This document shows, one piece after another, positions 1 through 13,631 of a DNA stretch of 64,000 nt (the first letter of the stretch is position 1; each line of letters starts with the position of its first letter). The stretch lies in IMG/VR virus record IMGVR_UViG_3300033977_000108, positions 62,001 to 126,000 of that record, one strand, 5' to 3'. The notes under the pieces are model-generated. The model searched no databases, had not been told where the DNA came from, and saw nothing but the letters and a program-made list of their open reading frames with translations. The translations under genes were made by a program, and so were the position numbers.

Positions 1-2103
1 GGTCCTTCTGGTTACACCGGCTATATGGGAAATACGGGGTATACTGGTTATACTGGTGGTACAGGGTATACAGGCACAAGCGCTACTGCCCCCCGTAGCG
101 GCAGAAAGGGCGATGGCGCGACGGGCATTGTAGTGTCGCCCTCCATGACCGTCTCGACAGACAATGTCTCCCTGAGCTTCTGGTTCAAGCCGCAAGCGCA
201 GCCTACTACCAGCACCGATGGCTCCATACTCGCTGCGGTTGACAACTGGCAGGCTATCGCAAGCTCTCATGCGATAAGCTTTGCCTGGAACGGCAAATCG
301 GGTGGATACGGTGCGGCGACGCTCTACTTCTCCACCTGGAGCGGCGTCAGCGACACATGGTATTTGGGCGTTGGCGCGCAAATCCCGAGCTCCTATTGGT
401 CTGGGATGGTCGGCATCTGGAACCACATTGCCTGCACCTTGCAATGGACGAATCCAGGATGCGTTGACACCATCTACCTGAACGGTACGCAGGTCGCCCA
501 GGTGACGGACAGCGGCGGCAATTATGAATATGGTCCCACCGGCTCGGGCTTCTATCTGAGCGCACTAAGCGGCTGTTGGGGCACGGCCAATACGGCGACC
601 GAGTATTCCAGCGACAGCGTGGCGGAGGTAGCGTTCTACGAATGCACGCTGACCGCTACAGATGTGACCAATCTCGCCAGTGGCGCTCCTGCCTCAACGG
701 TCGAGGCTTCCTCTCTCCAAGCCTATTGGAAGTTCATGGGCACCAGCCCAGAATCTGATTTGACCGGAAATAATAACAATGGCACAGTAACGGATACCAC
801 TATTGTATCTGGCCCAAGTGGCACAGCAGCGCTGGGCATGCCAGGAATGACGGGTTATACAGGATACACAGGAGCAGGTAATTTCACTGGGTATACGGGT
901 TATACAGGGTATACCGGTTATACGGGACGCACCGGGTATACCGGCTATACTGGTCCCGCAGGTGGCTCTGTATGGGCATGGCTGGGCAGTGCTTCGGGGA
1001 CTGCTATTACCCTGACTACCGCCAGCACTTGGTATGCTTTGGGCTCTTGGGGATTCAGTGGAACTTCTTTAGTAACGGTGAATACCAGCACTGGGATTAT
1101 TACTATTACCCAAGCTGGTACTTATTGTATTGATTTCTCAGGCGAGGTAACTTCATCTGCTACAGGGACCGTTGCCTTATTCCACAATAGCACCGAGCTT
1201 TATTCAGCCCAGGCGCTCGGAGGAACCAGCAATCAAACCATCTCCTTATCGGCAATTATTACCTGCGCCGCTGCTGATACACTAACGGTACAAGCACAGA
1301 GCGGAACCAGTGGGGCGACGGTTACACCAAACAACTCAACCCTTAGCGTCTCTTTAGTGGGCGGAATGGGGAATACAGGGTATACCGGTTCTACGGGATA
1401 TACAGGTCTTACGGGATATACGGGTTATACCAGCTATACCGGCTACACAGGGTATACCAGCTACACGGGCTACACTGGTTATACCAGCTATACAGGCTAC
1501 ACAGGGTATACTGGGGTAGGGAATTTTACTGGTTTTACAGGGTATACAGGATATACTGGTTATACCGGCATACCGGGCAGCGCGACAAGTACTGGGGCAA
1601 CGGGGTATACCGGGCCAAGCGAATGGTCCAGCATATCCCCCACTACTTCATCCACCTCGGTGCTCGGCTGCACCGTCTTCTCCGCCGGGACGTTTACCAT
1701 CTCAGCGGGTCAGACAAAGCGTTGGAAGTTGTCCGCCGCATACGGGACGTCCGGTTCCTACCCCGTCGGCTTCGTAATCTCACAGGGCGGCACCAACGGC
1801 TACGCCACGCAGGTTGCGGCGGGTGGCATAGGCATCTACTATACGACGAACTCTGGCTCTAGTTGGTCGGAGCCCGCCAGCACGTCCTGCACCAATACGG
1901 CGGGAACCTACATCGTCGATTTCGGCATTGCGGTAGACTCTGGCCATACCACATTATGGATAATGGTGAATGGTGCCCCTGCCTGTCAGTACGTGGATGC
2001 GACGCCCGTCCTGAACCTGACCAGCGGCACGAACTCGCTCTATCTCCGTCTAAACTCCAATTCCAGCAGCAATTTCAATGCCCTGTGGACTGCATCGCCA
2101 TAG
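1..2103 (+). CDS. Collagen-like (Gly-Tyr-Thr) fibre protein with LamG/ConA-like and C1q/BclA-CTD-like modules; 5' truncated by the window
   Basis: Frame 1 is open from base 1 (GPSGYTGYMGNTGYTG). GYT triplet tracts alternate with beta-rich domains: LSFWFKP..WNHIACT..IYLNG..AEVAFY (LamG-like) and GIITITQAGTYCIDF..AADTLTVQ (C1q/BclA-like). Confidence 0.8.
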   Translation, partial: GPSGYTGYMGNTGYTGYTGGTGYTGTSATAPRSGRKGDGATGIVVSPSMTVSTDNVSLSFWFKPQAQPTTSTDGSILAAVDNWQAIASSHAISFAWNGKSGGYGAATLYFSTWSGVSDTWYLGVGAQIPSSYWSGMVGIWNHIACTLQWTNPGCVDTIYLNGTQVAQVTDSGGNYEYGPTGSGFYLSALSGCWGTANTATEYSSDSVAEVAFYECTLTATDVTNLASGAPASTVEASSLQAYWKFMGTSPESDLTGNNNNGTVTDTTIVSGPSGTAALGMPGMTGYTGYTGAGNFTGYTGYTGYTGYTGRTGYTGYTGPAGGSVWAWLGSASGTAITLTTASTWYALGSWGFSGTSLVTVNTSTGIITITQAGTYCIDFSGEVTSSATGTVALFHNSTELYSAQALGGTSNQTISLSAIITCAAADTLTVQAQSGTSGATVTPNNSTLSVSLVGGMGNTGYTGSTGYTGLTGYTGYTSYTGYTGYTSYTGYTGYTSYTGYTGYTGVGNFTGFTGYTGYTGYTGIPGSATSTGATGYTGPSEWSSISPTTSSTSVLGCTVFSAGTFTISAGQTKRWKLSAAYGTSGSYPVGFVISQGGTNGYATQVAAGGIGIYYTTNSGSSWSEPASTSCTNTAGTYIVDFGIAVDSGHTTLWIMVNGAPACQYVDATPVLNLTSGTNSLYLRLNSNSSSNFNALWTASP
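1426..1506 (+). repeat. Three degenerate 27-nt tandem repeats encoding YTSYTGYTG
   Basis: tataccagctataccggctacacaggg / tataccagctacacgggctacactggt / tataccagctatacaggctacacaggg. Confidence 0.85.
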
Positions 2104-2174: not shown

Positions 2175-2930
2175 ATGAGTGTCGAATTCAGCGTTTGCCC
2201 TAATAAAGAACCCAACAATAAGTCTATCTCTATCTATCTTATTATCAATAAGCTAAATCACAAAATGTATGTTGGACAAACCTACAGGAGCTTGAAAAAG
2301 CGCTGGTGGGAGCATTGTCGTGGAACTCAATGTAGGGTTCTGGGCAGAGCTATACGCAAATACAAGTCTGAGAACTTTATTATCACACCAATAGTATCCG
2401 TGTTTATGGAAAAAGAGGCCGATGCATTGGAAACGGAATACATAAGCTTTTTTGATACTATGAATCCGTCCAAAGAATACAATCTTACATCTGGAGGCGG
2501 TAGGGGAAGAATGCTATCCAATGAATCCAGAGATAAAATGTCCGAATCAAAAAAGGGCGAAGCAAATCCACATCGTAACTTGATGAATAATAGCCAAAAA
2601 TACAGAATGAACTGGAAAGAGAACATGAAAAAGGCAATACATGGACATCCACATTGGGATTGGACTGGAAAATCCCCAGCGGCAATAAGCAGATACCTGA
2701 GAGTTCATTTTGGCGAGCCTAACAAATGCGAAAACGTTCATTGTATATACCCTCGTAAGATTGGTAAAAAGGGAAAATTACTACAGAAACCTACTGGATA
2801 CAAGTGGATAAATATCACTGATAATAATCTATCAAAGACTAGAGATGCTTGGCGCATATTATGTAATAGTTGCGCTTCATTCTGGAAGTGGAATGGCTTT
2901 GGTAATAAAAGTGAGGTGTGCTTTGCCTGA
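2175..2930 (+). CDS. Free-standing GIY-YIG homing endonuclease
   Basis: SIYLIINKLNHKMYVGQT..RWWEH..E..YNLTSGG, NUMOD3-like SNESRDKMSESKKG; AT-rich relative to flanks. Confidence 0.9.
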   Translation: MSVEFSVCPNKEPNNKSISIYLIINKLNHKMYVGQTYRSLKKRWWEHCRGTQCRVLGRAIRKYKSENFIITPIVSVFMEKEADALETEYISFFDTMNPSKEYNLTSGGGRGRMLSNESRDKMSESKKGEANPHRNLMNNSQKYRMNWKENMKKAIHGHPHWDWTGKSPAAISRYLRVHFGEPNKCENVHCIYPRKIGKKGKLLQKPTGYKWINITDNNLSKTRDAWRILCNSCASFWKWNGFGNKSEVCFA

Positions 2931-5463
2931 AAAACCCTTATGGTCAATAGTAAATATTATGCGAAACGAAGAAGCTCAGCTTCCTGGTCTAGCCGCTTCA
3001 TTAAGAGAATTCTTGGGGCGCGGTGGGGACTGGATTATCCTTGACACAGGGTCGATTGATAATAGCGTAAAAATTGCCAAGTCTCTTGGAGCGCGAGTTT
3101 TCGAAGCAGGGGAAAAGTTTATCTTTGCCATAAACGAGGATACAGCCAATAAAATAAATGAACGATTTATTATTCCTCCTGAAGAGCCTATCATAAAAGC
3201 CGGCGATAAGCTTTTTGATTATTCAAGTGCCAGAAATGAAGCTGCAAGCTATGCGCTGAATGATATGTGTCAGATGCCAGATGTAGATGAGAAATTCACG
3301 AAATGTGATATAGATTATATCAATGATGTAATAAGACAAGGCTATACACAAATAGAGTTCTCCTTTATTTTTGCGCATCTACCAAATGGCAAACCAGCTG
3401 TCCAATTCAGACAATCAAAAAGCTACAATCGCAAAATAATGAAATGGGTAGGCTATGTTCATGAAGTCCTTCAAGGAGATGCTAAACGAATCTACATTCC
3501 TCCAGATAAGCTTCTATTAGAGCACTTCCAGGCGCCACAGGCGCATCGTAGCCGATACATGGCAGGTCTCGCTTTAGATTGCTGGCAACATCCAGATAAC
3601 GATAGGAATTCCCACTACCTCGCCCGCGAACTATTCTGGAGCGGTCGCTATCATTCTGCAATTAAGGAATTTACGCGCCATGTCGCCATGAACCGTTGGA
3701 TACAAGAGCGCGGGGAATCAATGATTTTCATAGGCGATGCCCATTTAGCCCTGGGTGATGAGGAGAAAGCCATAGAGGCCTGGCATAAGGCTATTCAGAT
3801 AGATGATACGAGGCGCGCGGCCTGGATGCACCTGGCAGACCTTTATTGTAAAAAGAATAATCCACAGAGAGTTATTTGCTATTGTACCGCGGCCCTGGAA
3901 ATCCCGCCTAATGACTGCTACATGAATTTGAGTGCTCATTATACCTTTGAGCCTCACGAGCGTCTCTATTGGGCTTATAATGCCTTGGGCAACAAAGAAA
4001 AGGCCAAGGAGCACTGGAAGAAAGCATTTGACTATTGGCCTGATAACCCTAAGTTCCTGGCTGATAAGCAGTACTATGACCCAGCATCAGAGGAAGAGAT
4101 ACTACCGAAACTGGCTATTCTTCTTCCTACTTTGGGCCGGCCGGAAGGGTTAGAACGATGCCTGGAATCCATTCGTAAATCATTCTATCCAAAAGATTTG
4201 ATTACTGTCTATACAGATGACGATGCGGAAGCCTCCGTCCCTGTAAAAGTAAATCGTCTGGCAAAGGCTCATCTAGATGTGGATGCTTATGTCTATGCTG
4301 CCAATGATGTAGTGTTTGAGACCTTTTCTCTTCGTGATGCCGCCCGCGCCTCAAAAGAGCATGGATTGGTAGCCTTCAATTCAGGAGACCTCTACCCAGA
4401 CCAAGGGAACATCTGCGAGCACTTTATCATTACCAAGAATCTGGTGGATAAACTGGGAGAGATTTTCTGTGAGCGGTTCCATCATGTGGGCTGTGATAAT
4501 CTGCTCTGGGCGAAAGCCAGCAAGTTGGGGCAGGCCTATCGTTGTGAGGCGGCTATTATAAAACACCATCACTTTGCCAAGGGTGAGCCAATGGATGCCG
4601 TTTATGAGCGCGGCTGGTCGCAGGTGGAACAGGACCGCGCCATACTGAAAGAAGAACTGGCTAAACTTGAAGATCCCAACCGCGTAGAAGTGATAACCAA
4701 CATCCCCAAGCGTATCTTCACCATCTTCTTGAACGATTATGACGGAATGCCTTCAGTAGCCAAGAGATGCTTCCCTACGCACCAACTGCCTGGCTATGAG
4801 CATCGCTTCATTACAATGAAGAACGCCTACCTGGAGGCGCCCTACATTCAACAGGCCCTGGCCTCGAATAATAAAACCAAGTGGGTAAAGATTGCTGATT
4901 ATCTACGCATCTGGTATCTGCTGACAGAGGGCGGAATCTATGTGGATTCGGACATGGAAATCTTGCCGGGGAAGAACTTTGACCAGTTCTTACATTATAG
5001 GATGTTCGCCGGTAAAGAACACAATGGCTGGATAAGCAATGCCCTCATGGGTGCCGAAAAGGGCTATCCGTTCTTATCTGCTTGGCTGACTTACATGGAA
5101 AAGAACTTCCGCGGCGATGATGGGAAGGTCTATGAAGCCGCTATGGAGCCCATGACTAAGAACTACTGGCCTGGTGGCTCGGTTTTTTCTTATAATAACT
5201 TGGCCGATGTCATGGACCAGAAGCCTGGGGCTGCGAAAACTTTGTATCAGGAACCGCCTAATCCAGGCTGGTATAGGGAAGGCTTCATAGTTTATCCCCC
5301 AGAGTATTTCAATAACTTTGATCCAAGGACTTGGAAGCACGTAGTAAGCCCAGAGACCATAGCGATACATCACTTCACTAATGCATGGTTAGAAAGACGC
5401 CAGCAGCGCCCTTGTTGCGATTGGCAAAGCGATTGGGAAACGTGGCGCGAAAGAGGGAGTTAA
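2923..5463 (+). CDS. Multi-domain glycosyltransferase: GT2 + TPR + GT2-like + GT32-like (DxD)
   Basis: MRNEE..ILDTGSIDNS..DYSSARN..DVDE; TPR helices; ILLPTLGRPE..ANDV; IPKRIFTI..ADYLRIWYLLTEGGIYVDSD..AIHHFTNAW. TTG start at 2923 after GAGGTG is preferred over 2845. Confidence 0.85.
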   Translation: MPEKPLWSIVNIMRNEEAQLPGLAASLREFLGRGGDWIILDTGSIDNSVKIAKSLGARVFEAGEKFIFAINEDTANKINERFIIPPEEPIIKAGDKLFDYSSARNEAASYALNDMCQMPDVDEKFTKCDIDYINDVIRQGYTQIEFSFIFAHLPNGKPAVQFRQSKSYNRKIMKWVGYVHEVLQGDAKRIYIPPDKLLLEHFQAPQAHRSRYMAGLALDCWQHPDNDRNSHYLARELFWSGRYHSAIKEFTRHVAMNRWIQERGESMIFIGDAHLALGDEEKAIEAWHKAIQIDDTRRAAWMHLADLYCKKNNPQRVICYCTAALEIPPNDCYMNLSAHYTFEPHERLYWAYNALGNKEKAKEHWKKAFDYWPDNPKFLADKQYYDPASEEEILPKLAILLPTLGRPEGLERCLESIRKSFYPKDLITVYTDDDAEASVPVKVNRLAKAHLDVDAYVYAANDVVFETFSLRDAARASKEHGLVAFNSGDLYPDQGNICEHFIITKNLVDKLGEIFCERFHHVGCDNLLWAKASKLGQAYRCEAAIIKHHHFAKGEPMDAVYERGWSQVEQDRAILKEELAKLEDPNRVEVITNIPKRIFTIFLNDYDGMPSVAKRCFPTHQLPGYEHRFITMKNAYLEAPYIQQALASNNKTKWVKIADYLRIWYLLTEGGIYVDSDMEILPGKNFDQFLHYRMFAGKEHNGWISNALMGAEKGYPFLSAWLTYMEKNFRGDDGKVYEAAMEPMTKNYWPGGSVFSYNNLADVMDQKPGAAKTLYQEPPNPGWYREGFIVYPPEYFNNFDPRTWKHVVSPETIAIHHFTNAWLERRQQRPCCDWQSDWETWRERGS

Positions 5464-5466
5464 GGA

Positions 5467-6441
5467 ATGAAAATCGCTATCGTCTATCCAACTCTCTTAC
5501 CACTAGCCTGGGATGTATCTGGCGGCATCGTCCATACTTTGCGGAAGCTCGGGCACCTGGTGATGGAGATGCCTCAGTCCATAGAGTGCCATACTTCGGT
5601 CAACTGGTGGTCACGGCTTGATGAAATAAACGCTGGAGATTTATTCTTACTGATAGCCCCGGAATGGGCTATTGAGGGAGATGGCTATTGTGGGTATCAT
5701 AATGCCGAGCCTAAACCTAAAATAGATAGTATTCTATCAATGATAAAGATAAAGAAGGCGGCACTATTCACCGAAAATCAAGTGGTGGATGATGGGAAGA
5801 AGACCTTTGATTTCAAGCAGATAGCTTCAATGTTTGATTTCAATTTCTTTATTACAGCGCAGGAGGCTGCGCTCACAGGCGGTCTTTGGCTGCCGCCTGC
5901 CGTGGATACGGATATGTTTCATCCCACTGGGCAGCTGCGCACGATAGAAATAGCCGCGCCAGGAACAAGTTGGTCTGAAAGTAAAAGAGATTTCCTTTAT
6001 AGATACAGCCAAATAGCGTCTCCTCAATATATCCCTGTTGTGGGCAAATGCATAGTAGAGAACTTGGATGGAATCAGCCTGTACGAAACCGCCAAGCTAC
6101 TGGCTTATGATTATAACCGGGTAAAAATAGTAGTATCTTTACCCCCATGGAAGAATCATGTACCTACCTTTCTTCCTTTGCGGGCTACCGACGCAATGGC
6201 TTGTGGTTGTTGTGTTCTCACGCCGGTGCTCCGTGGCGCAGCGGCTGAAAATAGCAAGTTTATAAATGGAGTAGACCTTTTCTATTATGAGCCGACGCCC
6301 GCGGGCTTGTTAGAGACATTGCTGCGCGTAATAGACAAGCCAGAGAAACGCGACGCAGTAGCTGCCCGCGCTCCGCTCGCGATACAAGATGGAAATACTT
6401 TGGAGCAGCGAATGGAGACTATGCTGTCAGTTTGCTCATAG
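5467..6441 (+). CDS. GT-B (GT4/CgeB-like) glycosyltransferase
   Basis: WLPPAVDTDMFHP; LRATDAMACGCCVLT; C-terminal NTLEQRMETML. Confidence 0.7.
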   Translation: MKIAIVYPTLLPLAWDVSGGIVHTLRKLGHLVMEMPQSIECHTSVNWWSRLDEINAGDLFLLIAPEWAIEGDGYCGYHNAEPKPKIDSILSMIKIKKAALFTENQVVDDGKKTFDFKQIASMFDFNFFITAQEAALTGGLWLPPAVDTDMFHPTGQLRTIEIAAPGTSWSESKRDFLYRYSQIASPQYIPVVGKCIVENLDGISLYETAKLLAYDYNRVKIVVSLPPWKNHVPTFLPLRATDAMACGCCVLTPVLRGAAAENSKFINGVDLFYYEPTPAGLLETLLRVIDKPEKRDAVAARAPLAIQDGNTLEQRMETMLSVCS

Positions 6442-6450
6442 GATATTGCT

Positions 6451-7548
6451 ATGCTTTATCTAAACATGATAGTAAGAGACGAAGCTTCTTGTATCAAGCG
6501 CTGCCTTGATTCCATCAAACCATATATACAGGGCTGGGCTATCCTGGATACTGGTTCCACCGATGGGACGCAGGATATTATAAGGAAGGAATTAGCCAAT
6601 CTGCCCGGTGAATTGAGAGAGGCTGATTTCACAGACTTTGCCACAGCCAGAAATAAGGCTCTGGTACTTGCGAGGGCTTGGACTACGGAAGAGGATTATC
6701 TCCTGCTGATGGATGCTGATGAGGAACTCAAACAAGAAGAAAATACTATATTTCCTACCTTATCAGCAGATGTCTATGATTCCCTGATTCGTCTGGGGGG
6801 CTGTGAGTATTGGCGCACGCTAATCATCAAAGCACATTGGCCTTGGAAGTGGGCGGGCCCCTGCCATGAAAGAATTGCCTGCGATGGCCCTTTCACAAGA
6901 GATAAAATACGAGGTTTCTGGCGGCAGGCGTATCAGCATAAAGAAGAAGATAAAAAGGAGAGATCTCTCTGGTATGCCGCCATGCTGGAAAAAGAGATGG
7001 ATAAAGACCCGAAGGATGCGCGTGCTTGTTTCTATTGGGCGCAAAGCCTGCGGGATGCCGGAGAGTTGGAAAAGGCTGCGTTAGGCTATCGGCGTCGGGC
7101 TACGATGGGCGGCTTCCAAGAAGAAGTTTACATTTCTCTTCTCAATGTCGCCCGTATTTATGAGCGATTGAACAAGCCGGAAGATGTAGTAATAAACGCT
7201 TATCTAATGGCCGCTGCGTCTCGTCCTTCGCGCGCCGAAGCGTTAGGTAGCCTGATGTATTATCTGCGCAGCAGGAAGCGTTTCTATGAAGCTGCTCTTA
7301 TAGCCAGAGAAGCTTGCACGCTAATGCCAACCAATGACCTGCTATTCGTGGAACCAGAATGGGTCAATTGGCGTATCTTGGATGAGGCCTCCATCTCCTA
7401 TACTTGGGCCGGCCGCCTACGCCAAGCAAGAAATGCTATCTTGGCATTAATTACCAGACCTATCCCAGAGGCGCATAAACAGCGCATAGAAGCGAACCGC
7501 GACCTAATCATAAAAGCAGCAACCCCGCCAAATAAGCCTCAATCATAG
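6451..7548 (+). CDS. GT2 glycosyltransferase with TPR domain
   Basis: LNMIVRDEA..ILDTGSTDGT..DFATARNKAL..LMDADE..HE; TPR repeats; paralogue of the N-terminus of 2923..5463. Confidence 0.88.
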   Translation: MLYLNMIVRDEASCIKRCLDSIKPYIQGWAILDTGSTDGTQDIIRKELANLPGELREADFTDFATARNKALVLARAWTTEEDYLLLMDADEELKQEENTIFPTLSADVYDSLIRLGGCEYWRTLIIKAHWPWKWAGPCHERIACDGPFTRDKIRGFWRQAYQHKEEDKKERSLWYAAMLEKEMDKDPKDARACFYWAQSLRDAGELEKAALGYRRRATMGGFQEEVYISLLNVARIYERLNKPEDVVINAYLMAAASRPSRAEALGSLMYYLRSRKRFYEAALIAREACTLMPTNDLLFVEPEWVNWRILDEASISYTWAGRLRQARNAILALITRPIPEAHKQRIEANRDLIIKAATPPNKPQS

Positions 7549-7569: not shown

Positions 7570-7585
7570 ACCTATACTAACCAGG
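7570..7585 (+). promoter_or_regulatory. Repeated intergenic motif ACCTATACTAACCAGG (copy 1), candidate phage late promoter
   Basis: 16/16 identical to 11024-11039; 12-nt core also at 33751-33762. Confidence 0.55.
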
Positions 7586-7639
7586 TGTGGATAGTAGTAT
7601 CGCCTGCGAGCGTATCCTATGAAGTTTAGACGAGGCCTT

Positions 7640-8107: not shown

Positions 8108-8875
8108 ATGATAAACGACAATCTCGTAATCACCATCTCAGTACCCCAAACGCTCAAACTAACCGATGGCAGAATAATGGGGCAAAGCGCCACATTTTCT
8201 GTCGTTGGTGATTTGCATCCTTACTACTGCTCCGTGGATGAAGTGCGCCTGGAAGGCGGCACATACCTGCGGCGTGTAGTGGATTTGACCATCGCCAGCA
8301 TGATTTATCACATCTCCAGGGAAGCTGATGTGCTGAGTTATAGCCATCCTTTCATGCCGCCGGAAGATACTCCCGAGTGGGACCCAGTAATGAAGAGATG
8401 GAGAAACTTTGAATGGGCGCGAGAACACTTTGTCCATTGTGAAGCCGCGAGAAATCTGATCCTGAATGTCTTTGATTTGGCTGGCACGCGTGGGCATCGT
8501 ACCTTGGGAAACTTTGCTATCTCTCGTCAAGAGTTCACGCGCGAAGAAGGGCTCCCTGGTAAGCTCCGCGATCTCGAAAAAGAAGTTAAAGAGATGAAGC
8601 TCATGCTGAAAAGCGGAGCTACCATCGGGCCAGGCGGCCACGTAAGACCGAGAATGGCGGCGAAGTATCTATATGATAGCAATGATATTCCAAGGCCTGG
8701 CCGGCTATGGATAACCAGCGGGCCTGGCGCCAATGCAGTTACTATTGGTTCTCGTAGTTCTACTGGAGGCCATGGCAAGCCCACGAAGTATTACAGCCCA
8801 TTCTACGTTGCTCGTAGACTCGGCAGATATACTGGTCCGGTGATTACCTCTGTAGGCTACTTCGGGGTGATCTAA
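8108..8875 (+). CDS. Putative head-tail adaptor/neck protein
   Basis: YCSVDEVR-type start of a helical domain; lies upstream of the putative stopper, terminator and sheath genes (synteny-based). Confidence 0.45.
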   Translation: MINDNLVITISVPQTLKLTDGRIMGQSATFSVVGDLHPYYCSVDEVRLEGGTYLRRVVDLTIASMIYHISREADVLSYSHPFMPPEDTPEWDPVMKRWRNFEWAREHFVHCEAARNLILNVFDLAGTRGHRTLGNFAISRQEFTREEGLPGKLRDLEKEVKEMKLMLKSGATIGPGGHVRPRMAAKYLYDSNDIPRPGRLWITSGPGANAVTIGSRSSTGGHGKPTKYYSPFYVARRLGRYTGPVITSVGYFGVI

Positions 8876-8976: not shown

Positions 8977-9258
8977 ATGCTTGAAGATAAAAGACCTAAG
9001 AAATCTCCTCCAAATAAGCCACCCTATCCACCTGGCGACCATCCTATCTCTGTGCGGCCTACGGTAAATCCGTCTGCCAAATCCGTAGCATCGCCCAAGA
9101 GTAGGAAATCGCATCCAGGTCCCAAGGCTGCTCTTCCTAAGCCAGGCGTGCCCAAACTGGCGAAATCTAGCTGGTCAACTTCGCCTCCGGTGGGTCATTT
9201 TACCAAAAAACGACCACATATCCCTTCCTATTTCCATAGGCGGGCATTTCTTATCTAG
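8977..9258 (+). CDS. Basic Lys/Pro/Ser-rich small protein
   Basis: 93 aa, low complexity, abuts upstream stop. Confidence 0.55.
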   Translation: MLEDKRPKKSPPNKPPYPPGDHPISVRPTVNPSAKSVASPKSRKSHPGPKAALPKPGVPKLAKSSWSTSPPVGHFTKKRPHIPSYFHRRAFLI

Positions 9259-9441: not shown

Positions 9442-9996
9442 ATGTCACAGAACTTATACTACCCCGAGTCGCGTCAATTCGATGTACGTGAAGAAATGGA
9501 TAATCTTCTCTTCGGCAGCCACGAGAATGCGCCTATAGGTGTGCCGGTAATTGTGCGCCGCATACAAGATAAAGTATGTGCCTGCTGGGATGGGCAGACT
9601 GGCTCACCAGACCCTAATTGTAAGTATTGTGAAGGCGAGGGCTTCCTGTGGACAGAAGACCTGGAGACCGCCTACATTGTGCGTAACTTCGGAAGCGTCC
9701 AGAATCCCAGCGCAGTCATAAGCCAAGAGAATATGGTCACCCAGGTAGGTGTGACAGAGGTTAGCCGCGCGCTGGCGTTTATGACATATAGGGCATTTCC
9801 GAATTGGGAACGCTATGTAAAGCCCGAGCATCCGAGATACGATTCCCTATATGAGTTGAAAGTAGACGAAGATGGCAATATTCAACATCCCCTAATCCGT
9901 GCTGCTAAGTGGCAGATAAGGGATGTGGCGCCGCATCGCGGTGACTATGGACGTGTGGAGTACTTCGAATGTGGTTTGCAGAAAGAAACCAAATAG
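9442..9996 (+). CDS. Putative head-closure (stopper) protein with Zn-finger
   Basis: CACW...PNCKYCEGEG motif as in neck proteins of large myoviruses; C-terminal WQIRDV..GRVEYFEC; position. Confidence 0.55.
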   Translation: MSQNLYYPESRQFDVREEMDNLLFGSHENAPIGVPVIVRRIQDKVCACWDGQTGSPDPNCKYCEGEGFLWTEDLETAYIVRNFGSVQNPSAVISQENMVTQVGVTEVSRALAFMTYRAFPNWERYVKPEHPRYDSLYELKVDEDGNIQHPLIRAAKWQIRDVAPHRGDYGRVEYFECGLQKETK

Positions 9997-10010
9997 AATC
10001 AATGAGTTAG
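9997..10010 (+). promoter_or_regulatory. IHF-consensus-like site
   Basis: AATCAATGAGTTA matches WATCAANNNNTTR; 13-mer ATCAATGAGTTAG recurs at 55723-55735. Confidence 0.4.
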
Positions 10011-10012
10011 AG

Positions 10013-10150
10013 ATGATTGTTTATTTAATACGTAATAAATTGAATGGTAAAGGATACGTAGGACAGACAATACGTTCTCTTGAACAGAGATGGCCGGAAC
10101 ACAAAGCAGCTCTTATTGCCGGCCGTTGGGCCCAAAAAGAAACAAAATAA
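10013..10150 (+). pseudogene. Truncated GIY-YIG endonuclease remnant (45 aa)
   Basis: MIVYLIRNKLNGKGYVGQTIRSLEQRWPEH aligns with the N-terminus of 2175..2930; lacks the catalytic Glu/Asn half. Confidence 0.8.
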
Positions 10151-10169
10151 AGGACTTAAGGAGATAGAA

Positions 10170-10979
10170 ATGAGACAAATCACCCTGATGATCTTTGCCG
10201 CCGTGCTCTTCACAGCGACCCTTGTGTTGGGTCAGGGCGTACCCGAAATAGAGAAAGGTTATGTAAATACCAAGCTTTATCCCGCCACTGCTTTACTTTA
10301 TTCGCAGACCGCTGAAGGTAGCATGGACATGCGCTGCACAGCTACCGCCGTAGAAGAGACTGATAGCACTTTTACTTTTGTCACCGCCAGCCATTGCGGT
10401 TGTAGTGAGGATTCTGTCAAGAACATAGTAACAGTGGAGAAGACTTTCTTCTTCATTAGCCCCGACATCCCCGGCAATAAAATCTATCTAAAAGCTACAC
10501 CAATAGGCTGTGGCTTTCGTCATCGTGGAGACGATTTCTTCTTATTGACCACTGATAAAACCATCCATTTCCCTATTATTCCGCTGGGCAAGGACCCAAA
10601 GAGGATGGATAGCATCATCAATGTTGGCGGTCCCTTGGGCCTGGGTAAGCAAATCTTCGTAGGCATGGTCACCAATCCAAGCGTAGACCGGCCTATAGTA
10701 GATGGAGACATAAACTGGACTAATGCCGTTCTTTTACAGCTATTTGGCGTGAATGGCGGGAGTTCTGGTTCTTCCGTGGTTTGTGAAGACCAGCATGCTA
10801 TTTGTTCTTTCGTCGTCGGCAGCGTGGCAGAGACCACCATGGTTGCCATGCCTGTATCACGGCTAATCAAATTCAGGGAGGATTTGGCTGCTGGAAAATA
10901 CAAATGGTATGTGGCCAATCCAGATGAGCCGGCCAAGATTGTAGTGGGTGCGGCCGCCGCCCCGCCAAAGACCGACTAA
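10170..10979 (+). CDS. Trypsin-like serine protease with signal peptide
   Basis: AGGAG RBS; MRQITLMIFAAVLFTATLVLG; CTAT..VTASHC (His), DDFFLL (Asp), GGSSGS (Ser). Confidence 0.85.
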   Translation: MRQITLMIFAAVLFTATLVLGQGVPEIEKGYVNTKLYPATALLYSQTAEGSMDMRCTATAVEETDSTFTFVTASHCGCSEDSVKNIVTVEKTFFFISPDIPGNKIYLKATPIGCGFRHRGDDFFLLTTDKTIHFPIIPLGKDPKRMDSIINVGGPLGLGKQIFVGMVTNPSVDRPIVDGDINWTNAVLLQLFGVNGGSSGSSVVCEDQHAICSFVVGSVAETTMVAMPVSRLIKFREDLAAGKYKWYVANPDEPAKIVVGAAAAPPKTD

Positions 10980-11023
10980 GAGATTGTAAGTTCATTGGAT
11001 AGCGAGGTTTCCAAGCCGCCGCG

Positions 11024-11039
11024 ACCTATACTAACCAGG
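11024..11039 (+). promoter_or_regulatory. Repeated intergenic motif ACCTATACTAACCAGG (copy 2)
   Basis: Identical to 7570-7585; directly upstream of the terminator-sheath-tube block. Confidence 0.55.
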
Positions 11040-11062
11040 AGGGAGAATAGATTGAGGTCTGT

Positions 11063-11791
11063 TTGGAGAGGCCCGTGGAACAATTTGAGGAGCTTCTGAA
11101 TAATACACCTGTATTTCCTGGCACGGATGAGCCCAGGCAGTTGACACGCGCGGCTTTGCCGGCCGTTTATTTGAGGGGGTTTTTTAAGGCTGTCCAAGAA
11201 GCTATGCAGCTTCACCTAAAGACCGCCCCCTTGCCAGGAGATAAAGCTCCGACGCTGGTGGAAGATTTCCCGAAAGACCGACAAGGTAATCCAGATACCT
11301 CCTATGATGTAATACAATGGAGCGTATTGGAGAGCGTTCCGGCCGGAATGGACAGGTCAGGTCATGGCAGAGTGCCTTTCAGACCTTTGCCCAGGGAAGT
11401 AATATCTCATCCTGATAAGGCCGGCTATTTCCTGATTACCTATGGCTGGTGGGAGTGGGCGACGGTTGTATTCACTGTATTCGCCAAGAGTAATGCCAGG
11501 GCAAATGAACTGGCCGAATGGTTCCACTTCTTCATGATGTTGTACGGCCAGCAGTTAGATTTCATGCGGATGCGTGGAGTGAATAAGTTGCAGTTCATGG
11601 GGCGCGGCCGGGATGAAGAGAATGAGCGATTTGGCGGACAGACGCTCTATATGAGACCTTTGAAGTACGCGTTCCGCTTGGAAGTCCTTAACACTGCTGA
11701 AGTTAAGACGCTTGAGACCGTGGAGTTCAATCTGGGCAAAAACCCGATTGAAACTATCACTTTGCCCAAGCCTCAAACATTAGGGAGCTAA
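11063..11791 (+). CDS. Putative tail terminator/completion protein
   Basis: VVFTVFAKSNARANELAEWF..RPLKYAFR; immediately upstream of the sheath gene (start may be GTG 11075). Confidence 0.5.
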   Translation: MERPVEQFEELLNNTPVFPGTDEPRQLTRAALPAVYLRGFFKAVQEAMQLHLKTAPLPGDKAPTLVEDFPKDRQGNPDTSYDVIQWSVLESVPAGMDRSGHGRVPFRPLPREVISHPDKAGYFLITYGWWEWATVVFTVFAKSNARANELAEWFHFFMMLYGQQLDFMRMRGVNKLQFMGRGRDEENERFGGQTLYMRPLKYAFRLEVLNTAEVKTLETVEFNLGKNPIETITLPKPQTLGS

Positions 11792-11792
11792 T

Positions 11793-13631
11793 ATGAGCTA
11801 TGCGAATCTTCCTGGAGTACAAGTTTTCACGGTTGACGGCGGCTTAGCCGGGCTTGCCACTCCGCAAGACAAGTCTACATTGATTCTTGGAAGCGCGGGA
11901 ACTGGTCCGTGCAATGTTCCGTATCAGGTAACAAATAAGGCGACGGCTGAAGCAGTTTTTGGTTATAGCGGCACTTTGGCCCAGGGCTTGGAAGAAGTTG
12001 CTGTTTATTGCGATAATATCTTCTTGTATCGCTATGGAACCGAGCCTGCAACGGTTTCTGGCATCGGAGTCGATAGCGTATACCCTGGCTTTTCGATTAC
12101 GCTGGGCGAAGTGGCTGCGACTACTGGTACCGATTACCAGATCTGGTATTCCGCTGGTATCCTGTATCTGTGGCTAAGTGGTAATCTGGTCTATACAAAT
12201 GACCCAGAGAATCCGGTTGATACATCTGATTCGGTTGTTTCCGGGTCGGCTGTTGGCGGACAGGCCATCAATACCGGCAGCAATCCAAAGACCGTTGCTG
12301 GCGCACTGACTATTTCTGCCGCGGCTGCTGCTAGCGGATCTACGCTGGAGTATGTGCCTTGTGTGACTGGCCTTGGTTTGACTGGCAGAGAGGTCTATAT
12401 CGCGGCTGCTGAAGCATTGGATCTCCTGACCAACTTCCCAATACAGCAAGTCTATTGTCCAGAGATGATTTTGGACCAGCCAAACGTTGCTTTTTATTTG
12501 GGCGGCGAGGGTGGCGAGGCTAATGAAGTTGACAATCCGGCAACCAATCCTGATGCTCTTGATTGGCTGAATACCACGACCGACCAGTACGGAAATGTGA
12601 CCTATCATTGGGCATCCGAGAGCGTGGATAGCAATGGAAATCCAGCTACACCACAAACATTTACCAGTGCTACTCAGCGCTTAGGTGCTAACTATCATGA
12701 AGTAAACTTCGGCTATCAGCTGGCGCGATTTGCCGCTGCTCAATCCGAAGTATTAGGCGGCTGTGTCGCTTTCCTAGGCTGCGCGCCGACACCAAACAAC
12801 AAATACGACTTGCCAAGCATCAGAAAGTGGATCGGCTACTTGCCCACTTATAATCCCGTCACTGGGACTCCAACGGTATCTGGCGGCGGGCTATTGGGCA
12901 TACCATATCTAGTTGGTTGCTCTGCTGACACTTTGAATTTCCTGTGTGCCGACGCGGCCAATGGCTATCGGTTGCCAGGCTTTTTCCAGACCGATTCCGA
13001 TGAATATGATGGTGGAGTTGATTACGATCAGAACAACTATCCTATTGACATCGGCGCCTATTTGCACGTATTCGGTGATACGGCCCTTATCCAGAACGGG
13101 TATGGGCAATATATTGGGAACGCGGCAGCTGTTATCGCCGGTTTGCACTCAACTCTTGACCCGAAGGTAGCATTGACTTACGAGCCTGTGGTCAGTGTGA
13201 CCCAGTTGTACAGAGCCTCGCTCAATCAGCTGGATGCTCTGACACAAGCGAAAGTTGACATGCTGCGTTACAATGGGGCCGGTAATCCTCCAGTCTGCCT
13301 GCATGACCGTACTGCTGCTGGAAGCCAGAGTGACTATATCTTCTTGCTGCGTCAGGACATCAAGTTCCTGGTAGCACAGATACTCTTCACTACCGGCGGC
13401 CAGTTCATCGGCAAATCCAGTATTGATGGTTTGCAGATGCAATCTATGCAGACCGCTCTTGATAAGCAGATGCAACAATTGCAGAAGAACCAGTACATCA
13501 GCTCTTACAGTTTCACGGTCTCTACTACAGTTGCCGATTATAAAATAGGAAGGGCTACAATCAATGTAAGATTTAATCCAGCTAATGAATTGGTTCAGCT
13601 CTTCTGTGTCATCGGCATACAACAGACATAA
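11793..13631 (+). CDS. Contractile tail sheath protein
   Basis: N-terminal LPGV; AEAVFG; C-terminal FIGK..ALDKQMQQL..INVRFNPANELVQL typical of the sheath C-domain; 612 aa. Confidence 0.8.
   Translation: MSYANLPGVQVFTVDGGLAGLATPQDKSTLILGSAGTGPCNVPYQVTNKATAEAVFGYSGTLAQGLEEVAVYCDNIFLYRYGTEPATVSGIGVDSVYPGFSITLGEVAATTGTDYQIWYSAGILYLWLSGNLVYTNDPENPVDTSDSVVSGSAVGGQAINTGSNPKTVAGALTISAAAAASGSTLEYVPCVTGLGLTGREVYIAAAEALDLLTNFPIQQVYCPEMILDQPNVAFYLGGEGGEANEVDNPATNPDALDWLNTTTDQYGNVTYHWASESVDSNGNPATPQTFTSATQRLGANYHEVNFGYQLARFAAAQSEVLGGCVAFLGCAPTPNNKYDLPSIRKWIGYLPTYNPVTGTPTVSGGGLLGIPYLVGCSADTLNFLCADAANGYRLPGFFQTDSDEYDGGVDYDQNNYPIDIGAYLHVFGDTALIQNGYGQYIGNAAAVIAGLHSTLDPKVALTYEPVVSVTQLYRASLNQLDALTQAKVDMLRYNGAGNPPVCLHDRTAAGSQSDYIFLLRQDIKFLVAQILFTTGGQFIGKSSIDGLQMQSMQTALDKQMQQLQKNQYISSYSFTVSTTVADYKIGRATINVRFNPANELVQLFCVIGIQQT

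What the first reader, a model, noticed from the sequence alone, without database searches (positions are those of the whole stretch)
9979..10150. GIY-YIG remnant ends with a synonymous copy of the upstream gene's last codons
Seen: the neck gene ends CAG AAA GAA ACC AAA TAG (QKETK*) and the endonuclease ORF ends CAA AAA GAA ACA AAA TAA (QKETK*). That is 15/18 nt, with all three differences at silent third positions. Inference: the element inserted inside the 3' end of an essential gene and supplied a recoded replacement end, possibly cleavage-immune, while borrowing the displaced end and stop codon. This would be splicing-free invasion of a coding sequence.
Basis: partly seen in the sequence, partly recalled or inferred. 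Interest (0 to 1): 0.65.

Follow-up and report, generated by a model that had tools for sequence, protein, structure and literature searches.

The report
Duplicated gene tail beside dead endonuclease
A jumbo phage carries the dead stub of a selfish GIY-YIG endonuclease gene just after a virion gene, flanked by two copies of that gene's last five codons and stop. This is a recombination scar of a kind known from fungal mitochondria, and it is small and no longer active here.

Summary
The virion ("neck") gene ends at 9979-9996. A 45-codon GIY-YIG stub (10013-10150) ends at 10133-10150 with the same five residues plus a stop: 15 of 18 bases match, and all three differences are silent. In the whole 204.6 kb phage genome, on both strands, the first copy has only this one match at 15/18 or better.

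The closest relative, L003, has an empty site with a single tail. Its stop and the bases after it match the downstream copy's context. A second relative (L046/L047) has the same GIY-YIG gene starting 27 nt after its neck stop; its first 30 residues are 27/30 identical to the stub. A third (L016) has an HNH endonuclease gene in the same spacer.

The upstream tail arrived linked to the endonuclease gene, and the downstream tail is the resident relic. However:
- the endonuclease ORF itself sits in the spacer;
- the shared stop is most simply a by-product of truncation;
- the protease is a separate cassette, absent from all relatives;
- immunity to cleavage is untested.

The same architecture is well known for mobile endonuclease ORFs in fungal mitochondria. 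I rate this a new phage member of a known kind, of moderate interest.

The parts
9442..9996 (+). Neck/virion structural gene, 184 aa, intact
   Evidence: PHROG virion structural protein hits. There are 22 homologues, all ending at the same alignment column with a family C-terminus ...ELGLxKExx. Gene order p255 - neck - p242 - sheath is conserved in relatives.
9979..9996 (+). Copy 1: functional tail of the neck gene (QKETK + TAG), inferred to have arrived linked to the endonuclease gene
   Evidence: The TAG stop followed by AATCAA is shared with the HNH-occupied allele L016. Endonuclease-occupied alleles use TAG in 3 of 3 cases; endonuclease-free alleles in 2 of 14 (Fisher 0.015, my count).
9997..10012 (+). 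16-nt spacer-derived stretch between the neck stop and the endonuclease ATG
   Evidence: An 11-nt exact match (ATGAGTTAGAG) to the neck-p242 spacer of L009, and an AATCAA start as in L016.
10013..10102 (+). GIY-YIG homing endonuclease stub, codons 1-30 (GIY...YVG...R..EH), 36% GC
   Evidence: Pfam PF01541 E 2.6e-8 and PHROG homing endonuclease hits. 27/30 aa identical to the GIY-YIG ORF that starts 27 nt after the neck stop in L046/L047. A 251-aa paralogue lies at window 2175..2930.
10103..10132 (+). 30-nt linker (KAALIAGRWA), 60% GC, origin unresolved: either more endonuclease sequence or filler copied from the p242 5' region
   Evidence: For endonuclease origin: the Pfam alignment runs to residue 38, and some homologues read EH[IV]KAAL. 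For filler: GC jumps from 0.36 to 0.60; 10116-10127 is identical to 11156-11167 in p242, a match reached by 27 of 5000 shuffles; and L047 diverges right after EH.
10133..10158 (+). Copy 2: relic of the resident neck tail (QKETK + TAA) with the native start of the spacer (TAAAGGACTTA at 10148-10158)
   Evidence: TAAAGGACTTA matches 11/11 the sequence 4 nt after the neck stop in L046, and 10/11 the stop plus spacer start of L003. Removing 9979-10132 leaves an intact neck ORF ending QKETK*.
10159..10982 (+). Separate protease cassette: RBS AAGGAG (10158-10163) and a secreted S1-C trypsin-like protease ORF (10170..10979)
   Evidence: Weak Trypsin_2 hit. 306 homologues, some named S1-C serine protease, in unrelated phage contexts: next to GroEL/ES, or in connector/tail modules. 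Absent between neck and p242 in all relatives. Removing it restores collinearity with L003.
10983..11062 (+). Native neck-p242 spacer with the conserved motif CTATACTAAC (11026-11035), probably a promoter
   Evidence: The motif is present in the spacer of nearly all relatives. A second exact copy lies at 7572. The promoter role is inferred.
11063..11791 (+). p242 virion structural gene, which directly follows the neck gene in relatives
   Evidence: PHROG 20284; tblastn synteny.

Best explanation
This is the scar of a free-standing GIY-YIG homing endonuclease gene (HEG) that entered the neck-p242 spacer by recombination with a diverged, HEG-bearing relative.

The incoming tract carried the donor's last neck codons, its TAG stop, 16 nt of donor spacer and the HEG. 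On the other side the repair joined illegitimately, not in homology. As a result the resident genome's own last five neck codons, its TAA stop and its spacer start were kept just downstream. That spacer already held a protease cassette.

The HEG lost everything beyond its first 30-38 codons, either in that same aberrant join or in a later deletion. The stub happens to run in frame into the relic tail and uses its stop.

Shown: the duplication; the native context of both copies; the empty site; occupancy of the same spacer by the same HEG family in a relative; and the truncation.

Inferred: the order of events, the donor/recipient roles and the repair pathway. One attractive version is an abortive homing event, in which normal homing would have deleted the protease cassette. 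Nothing suggests the stub is active today.
For: - The repeat is unique in the genome.
- Copy 2 plus TAAAGGACTTA equals the native neck-stop context of L003 (10/11) and L046 (11/11).
- Copy 1 plus TAG AATCAA, and the ATGAGTTAGAG stretch, match spacer sequence of L016 and L009.
- L003 and 13 other relatives have one tail and no HEG.
- L046/L047 carry a 27/30-identical GIY-YIG N-terminus 27 nt after the neck stop. Nucleotide identity there is about 69% (my estimate from the alignment) with mostly silent changes, so both were once functional genes.
- L016 carries a NUMOD3-HNH HEG in the same spacer.
- Removing the 154-nt unit and the 828-nt protease cassette restores collinearity with L003.
- All three differences between the copies are silent. 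I estimate about 0.07 for this under in-place duplication plus drift, against near 1 for two functional alleles.
- HEG-occupied alleles use TAG (3/3) and HEG-free alleles mostly TAA (12/14 not TAG). The relic has TAA.
- L003 shows a mirror-image case: a different protease cassette flanked by an 18/15-nt repeat of the first codons of the next gene. The copies differ by a silent Leu codon swap and one whole codon, and the relic copy is nearer to the window's allele (16/18).
- Precedents: co-conversion from distant cleavage sites by T4 Seg enzymes (PMC2988022), and SegB-linked duplications joined at microhomology that truncate segB (PMC13096335).
Against: - Only 18-26 nt are duplicated and only three differences exist, so the argument from silent differences is statistically thin.
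- Copies 1 and 2 are equally similar to the L003 tail (13/18 each). The assignment of donor and resident therefore rests on the few bases after each stop.
- No relative shows an intact HEG with both tails. The contigs that carry the HEG (L046, L047) stop 109-146 nt after the neck gene, and the longer one has no DNA on hand.
- L003 is about 74% identical in DNA, too far to trace a co-conversion tract in the neck gene.
- The origin of the 30-nt linker is unresolved.
Confidence: 0.6

Rival explanations
1. In-place short duplication. The HEG, or any DNA, was inserted by an illegitimate event that duplicated about 18-22 nt of the target, as with a staggered break that is filled in or a template switch back to an upstream point. 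The two copies started identical and then drifted.
For: Short imperfect direct repeats directly flank the 136-nt insert. The L003 protease cassette has the same look. The copies are more alike (15/18) than either is to L003 (13/18).
Against: All three differences are silent, and the stop codon and 3' context of each copy match different natural alleles. In L003 the relic copy is closer to the window allele than L003's own functional copy is. None of this is decisive with so few sites.
Confidence: 0.22
2. Evolved strategy. The element is a tail-carrying mobile unit that invades the 3' end of the essential gene, supplies a recoded end that its own enzyme cannot cut, and reuses the displaced end and stop for its own ORF. 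This would be an active phage counterpart of fungal mitochondrial mobile ORFs.
For: The architecture matches fungal mORF gene hybrids: a foreign C-terminus, an endonuclease ORF, then a native C* relic (PMC3630166). The differences are silent. The TAG stop is associated with occupied alleles.
Against: The enzyme is dead: half of the catalytic domain and all DNA-binding parts are missing. In occupied relatives the ORF is intergenic with its own start well after the stop. The full-length paralogue at 2175..2930 has no flanking tail repeat. The in-frame fusion needs no selection. No cleavage data exist.
Confidence: 0.12
3. Coincidence. Copy 2 is just the A-rich leader of the protease cassette, and the truncated ORF happens to end there.
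For: Gene boundaries here are A-rich. Protease homologues in other phages end PKEK*/PKK*, and K/E-rich ends are common. Pairs at 15/18 are not rare at the base level.
Against: The match is the only one in 409 kb of sequence. It is in frame, with aligned stops and silent-only differences. It extends into an 11/11 match with the native post-neck context in L046. Protease homologues in other phages have unrelated leaders.
Confidence: 0.05

Closest known systems
Mobile endonuclease ORFs (mORFs) of fungal mitochondria that create gene hybrids: Allomyces macrogynus atp6; Glomus sp. atp6, atp9 (GIY-YIG), cox2, nad3 (PMC3630166 and the Allomyces work it cites)
   Same: An endonuclease ORF sits behind a gene. 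The functional C-terminal coding end is a foreign copy linked to the ORF, and the native C* end is kept downstream as a relic. The copies differ mostly by silent changes. [quoted passage not shown]
   Different: Here the host is a phage structural gene, not a mitochondrial respiratory gene. The relic is only 18-26 nt, against about 50-280 nt. The endonuclease is reduced to 30-38 codons. No expression or cleavage data exist. The ORF has its own start in the spacer rather than being fused to the gene.
Free-standing GIY-YIG Seg endonucleases of T4-like phages (SegA-G) and intronless homing (PMC2988022)
   Same: A GIY-YIG plus NUMOD3-type free-standing HEG family lies between essential genes. Presence varies among relatives. 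Flanking gene sequence is co-converted because cleavage lies away from the insertion point.
   Different: No retained duplicate of the target gene's end is described for Seg genes in that review (no occurrence of 'duplication'). This HEG is a stub.
SegB-linked segmental amplification in phage T6 (PMC13096335)
   Same: A GIY-YIG HEG locus in a phage is duplicated, with the join at microhomology that removes the 3' end of the HEG.
   Different: That case is a 718-bp tandem unit under selection from a defence system. Here the two units have different 3' contexts, so it is not a simple tandem repeat.
HEG decay cycle (invasion, fixation, degeneration, loss), referred to in PMC13405050; short N-terminal GIY-YIG ORFs such as PHROG 20015
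   Same: A truncated, inactive N-terminal fragment is left at a former homing site. L114 holds another 46-aa internally deleted copy.
   Different: Nothing essential. The tail repeat is the extra feature.

Membership tests
GIY-YIG homing endonuclease (Pfam PF01541) | N-terminal GIY...YIG motifs and the conserved Arg | tested here: met
   The stub reads VYLIRN..GKGYVGQT..R..EH. PF01541 E 2.6e-8, 34.5 bits against a cut-off of 22.6.
GIY-YIG homing endonuclease (Pfam PF01541) | Complete catalytic domain (profile about 78 positions, including the second half with the conserved Glu and Asn) | tested here: not met
   Only profile positions 3-38 of 78 are matched, in a 45-aa ORF. Homologues are 158-360 aa. 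It is a remnant, not an enzyme.
GIY-YIG homing endonuclease (Pfam PF01541) | DNA-binding region (NUMOD3/HTH-type) after the catalytic domain | tested here: not met
   Absent from the stub. Present in the full-length paralogue at 2175..2930 (NUMOD3).
Free-standing phage HEG at a homing site | Presence/absence polymorphism at the same site among related genomes | tested here: met
   The same HEG family lies after the neck gene in L046/L047. It is absent in L003, L004, L048 and 11 other distinct relatives. An HNH HEG occupies the spacer in L016.
Free-standing phage HEG at a homing site | Site-specific cleavage of the empty allele and immunity of the occupied allele | not testable with these tools
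   Needs an intact enzyme and cleavage assays.
mORF-type gene hybrid (fungal mitochondria) | Duplicated C-terminal coding end flanking the endonuclease ORF, with the upstream copy in phase with the gene | tested here: met
   Copy 1 at 9979-9996 completes the neck ORF. Copy 2 at 10133-10150 follows the stub.
mORF-type gene hybrid (fungal mitochondria) | Downstream copy is the native one (closest to the empty allele of relatives); upstream copy is foreign | tested here: inconclusive
   Stop codon and 3' context favour this: TAA-AGGA(C/T)TTA in L003 and L046 against TAG-AATCAA in L016. Within the 18 nt, both copies are 13/18 to L003.
mORF-type gene hybrid (fungal mitochondria) | Unit (foreign end plus ORF) is mobile as a whole, driven by its endonuclease | not tested
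   No intact copy with both tails was found. The contigs with the HEG end too early.

The most novel reading that the evidence does not exclude
Phage free-standing HEGs, and perhaps HEG-less cassettes such as the two protease genes, move between diverged jumbo phages as units that carry the last or first few codons of the neighbouring essential gene. They leave the resident codons as a relic on the far side. That would be a phage counterpart of mitochondrial mORF gene hybrids, and a general splicing-free way to insert at gene boundaries, with the neck-p242 spacer as a hot spot.
Probability: 0.2. Interest if true: 0.55.

Novelty: new member of a known kind. Interest (0 to 1): 0.38.

Why it matters
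If the reading holds, homing-type gene conversion in phages can leave short duplicated gene ends. Such ends could serve as a searchable signature, marking former HEG sites and the direction of transfer even after the HEG has decayed.

It would also link phage HEG biology to the C-terminal duplications long known in fungal mitochondria. The neck-p242 spacer of this jumbo-phage group would be flagged as a recurrent landing site: GIY-YIG and HNH endonuclease genes and a secreted protease all lie in this spacer, and an EndoVII-family gene lies just upstream of the neck gene in one relative.

For annotation, the 45-aa ORF should be marked as a pseudogene fragment, not a gene.

Tried and rejected
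No read-level test for empty or occupied alleles was possible, and read laying was not used.
- A single-protein search of IMG/VR and a protein search of GenBank phages gave no close relative.
- The contigs of P0004 and the longest contig of P0003 have no DNA on hand.
- I tested whether the duplication extends upstream of QKETK into the 30-nt linker. It does not: 627 of 2000 shuffles scored as well.
- I considered a third degenerate tail copy at the protease end (PPKTD*). I rejected it because protease homologues in other phages natively end PKEK*/PKK*.
- A second adjacent-gene tail pair in the genome (…LDKAK*/…LDKVK*) proved to be two tandem paralogous genes, not a tail duplication.
- Three other 15/18 tail repeats are in non-coding frames or not at gene ends.
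- No flanking tail repeat surrounds the full-length GIY-YIG paralogue.
- There is no Rfam family and no convincing promoter or terminator in 9500-11300.
- Sliding identity to L003 shows no co-conversion tract, because divergence is uniformly high.
- The large protein-representative search, structure prediction and complex prediction were not needed and not run.

Full report
**Setting**

The window is bases 62001-126000 of a 204,633-bp IMG/VR phage record with direct terminal repeats. Around the finding, the genes on the + strand are:
- a 255-aa protein (8108..8875);
- three small ORFs;
- a 184-aa virion structural ("neck") gene (9442..9996);
- a 45-codon ORF (10013..10150);
- a trypsin-like protease with a signal-peptide-like N-terminus (10170..10979);
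- a 242-aa virion protein (11063..11791);
- the tail sheath (11793..13631).

**The observation**

The two 18-nt ends are exactly as described, and both read QKETK plus a stop. They share 15 of 18 bases, and the three differences are silent third-position changes. The repeat finder lists the pair on its own.

The 45-aa ORF is the N-terminal half of a GIY-YIG catalytic domain (PF01541, E 2.6e-8, profile positions 3-38 of 78; PHROG homing endonuclease families).

Base identity alone is weak evidence. Pairs at 15/18 or better within 300 nt occur at about 0.004 per position, and 7 of 1316 stop-to-stop ORF tails have one. Three further facts settle it:
- The upstream copy has a single match at 15/18 or better in the entire genome on both strands, and it is this one, 154 nt away.
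- It is the only tail pair with identical translation.
- The match continues into native flanking context (see below).

**Relatives**

A word search found 22 homologues of the neck protein. All end at the same alignment column, with a conserved ...ELGLxKExx end, and the closest (82% identical) ends NKETK. The upstream QKETK is thus the family's normal end.

Across 17 distinct loci the gene order is p255 - neck - p242 - sheath. A spacer of 50-130 nt between neck and p242 holds a conserved CTATACTAAC motif. Compared with that, the window has 1066 extra bases.

In the closest relative, L003, the neck stop TAA is followed by AGGATTTA and then by spacer sequence that aligns with window 10983 onward. 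Two cuts restore collinearity with L003:
- Removing the 154-nt unit 9979-10132 leaves an intact neck ORF ending in QKETK.
- Removing the 828-nt protease cassette (taken as 10155-10982 in that alignment) closes the rest of the gap.

So there are two separate insertions, not one.

**Which copy is native**

The downstream copy ends TAA and runs into AGGACTTA. The 11-mer TAAAGGACTTA is found 11/11 four bases after the neck stop in L046, and 10/11 as stop plus spacer start in L003. I estimate the chance of such an 11-mer in the first 30 nt after the stop of 16 relatives at about 1e-4.

The upstream copy ends TAG and runs into AATCAA, as in L016. Its following 16 nt contain an 11-nt exact match to the L009 spacer.

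So each copy is contiguous with a different natural-looking allele context. Endonuclease-occupied alleles use TAG in 3 of 3 cases (window, L046, L016). Endonuclease-free alleles use TAG in 2 of 14 (Fisher 0.015, my count). The relic has TAA.

Within the 18 nt themselves, both copies are 13/18 to L003, so this assignment rests on few bases.

**The endonuclease**

L046/L047 carry a neck protein 64% identical to the window's. Their GIY-YIG ORF starts 27 nt after the neck stop, and its first 30 residues are 27/30 identical to the stub. Nucleotide identity over those codons is about 69% by my estimate from the alignment, with mostly silent differences, so both were once working genes. These contigs end 109-146 nt past the neck gene, so the far side cannot be seen.

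L016 has a NUMOD3-HNH endonuclease gene in the same spacer. One P0003 contig has an Endonuclease_7 gene just upstream of the neck gene. The site is a hot spot.

Eighty GIY-YIG homologues from IMG/VR are mostly 158-360 aa, and none ends in QKETK. The window also holds a full-length 251-aa paralogue (2175..2930, GIY-YIG plus NUMOD3), which has no flanking tail repeat.

**The 30-nt linker (10103-10132) is unresolved**

- The Pfam alignment runs to residue 38, and some homologues read EH[IV]KAAL, so the linker may still be endonuclease sequence.
- Against that, GC jumps from 0.36 to 0.60, and the closest homologue diverges right after EH.
- In addition, 10116-10127 is identical to 11156-11167 in the 5' part of p242. 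A match of that length occurs in 27 of 5000 shuffles.
- It may therefore be filler copied from p242 during an illegitimate join.

**The protease**

It has over 300 homologues, some named S1-C serine protease, at 73-79% identity in the closest. They sit in unrelated phage contexts: next to GroEL/GroES, or inside connector/tail modules. Their leaders are unrelated to the window's.

It is a floating accessory gene. It sits exactly after TAAAGGACTTA, the same junction that holds the GIY-YIG gene in L046.

**A mirror-image case in L003**

In L003 a different trypsin-like protease (Trypsin_2, E 6e-15) is inserted after the sixth codon of the homologue of window gene 8977..9258. It is flanked by an 18-nt and a 15-nt copy of that gene's first codons. 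The copies differ by a silent Leu codon swap and one whole codon.

The relic copy is 16/18 to the window's allele, with silent differences only. The protease ORF takes its stop from inside the second copy.

Two such boundary duplications in two related genomes suggest a shared way of acquiring cassettes. One side recombines in homology, inside the neighbouring gene. The other side joins illegitimately, leaving a short relic of the resident gene end.

**Mechanism**

Most likely (about 0.6), a diverged HEG-bearing relative served as template. The tract copied in held the donor's neck tail, TAG, 16 nt of spacer and the HEG. The far end joined illegitimately, just upstream of the resident tail. 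This kept that tail, its TAA and the protease cassette, which normal homing into this spacer would have removed.

The HEG was truncated in the same event or later, and the stub reads into the relic in frame by chance (one in three).

Precedents:
- T4 Seg enzymes cleave away from their insertion point and co-convert flanks (PMC2988022).
- SegB-linked duplications in T6 are joined at microhomology that truncates segB (PMC13096335).

The silent-only differences favour two functional alleles over in-place duplication plus drift. My estimate is about 0.07 against near 1. With three sites this is only suggestive.

**Comparison with what is known**

The architecture is foreign functional C-terminal end, then endonuclease ORF, then native C* relic, with mostly silent differences between the copies. 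This is the defining picture of mobile endonuclease ORFs in fungal mitochondria: Allomyces atp6, and Glomus atp6, atp9 (with a GIY-YIG ORF), cox2 and nad3 (PMC3630166).

The papers I searched on phage HEGs did not describe such tail duplications. This is a limited library, so it is not proof of absence.

I therefore file this as a new, decayed, phage member of a known kind.

**Limits**

- No close relative (over 90% DNA identity) was available.
- The read-level tools could not be used.
- The donor/recipient assignment rests on short contexts.
- Cleavage immunity is untested.

Noticed in passing
L003:448-500 and L003:1347-1375 (window homologue 8977-8994): A trypsin-like protease cassette in L003 is inserted after codon 6 of the next gene. 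It is flanked by 18/15-nt copies of that gene's start (MLEDKR / MLDKR), which differ by a silent Leu swap and one codon. The protease ORF ends inside the second copy. This is a mirror image of the window's tail repeat.
   Followed up: partly
window 10116-10127 and 11156-11167: A 12-nt exact repeat (TTGCCGGCCGTT) links the GC-rich linker of the endonuclease stub to the 5' part of the p242 gene. A match of that length occurs in 27 of 5000 shuffles. It may be templated filler from an illegitimate join, or chance.
   Followed up: partly
window 10170-10979: The secreted S1-C trypsin-like protease is a floating accessory gene. It is found at 73-79% identity in unrelated phage contexts (beside GroEL/GroES, or inside connector/tail modules). 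Here it sits at the same junction (after TAAAGGACTTA) that holds a GIY-YIG gene in L046.
   Followed up: partly
L016:3611-4225; no-DNA contig of P0003: Other endonuclease genes cluster around the neck gene in relatives. L016 has a NUMOD3-HNH gene in the neck-p242 spacer. One P0003 contig has an Endonuclease_7-family gene immediately upstream of the neck gene.
   Followed up: partly
window 11026-11035 and 7572-7581; spacers of L003-L019: The motif CTATACTAAC(C)AGG is conserved in the neck-p242 spacer of nearly all relatives and recurs upstream of the gene at 7619. It is probably a phage promoter.
   Followed up: no
L006, L009, L011, L013, L015, L018 (sheath gene region, about 4300-6500 in each locus): tblastn matches to the tail sheath are split by gaps of 150-870 nt in several relatives. 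These could be lineage-specific insertion domains, or introns/HEGs within the sheath gene.
   Followed up: no
window 25-2103 and 2175-2930: A 692-aa protein with long GYTGYTG collagen-like repeats is followed by a full-length GIY-YIG/NUMOD3 endonuclease gene (251 aa). The end of that gene overlaps the start of a large multi-domain glycosyltransferase-like ORF (2845..5463).
   Followed up: partly
L129:484-1136 (genome 176283-176935, minus strand): Two adjacent genes (128 and 89 aa) end ...LDKAK* and ...LDKVK*. They are tandem paralogues sharing a GDF[FI]VYAS core, not a tail duplication.
   Followed up: yes
L114:4001-4140: This is another short GIY-YIG ORF (46 aa). It looks like an internal deletion that fuses the N-terminal motif to the C-terminal end of a full-length homologue. 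Such stubs recur (compare PHROG 20015, a 46-position profile).
   Followed up: no
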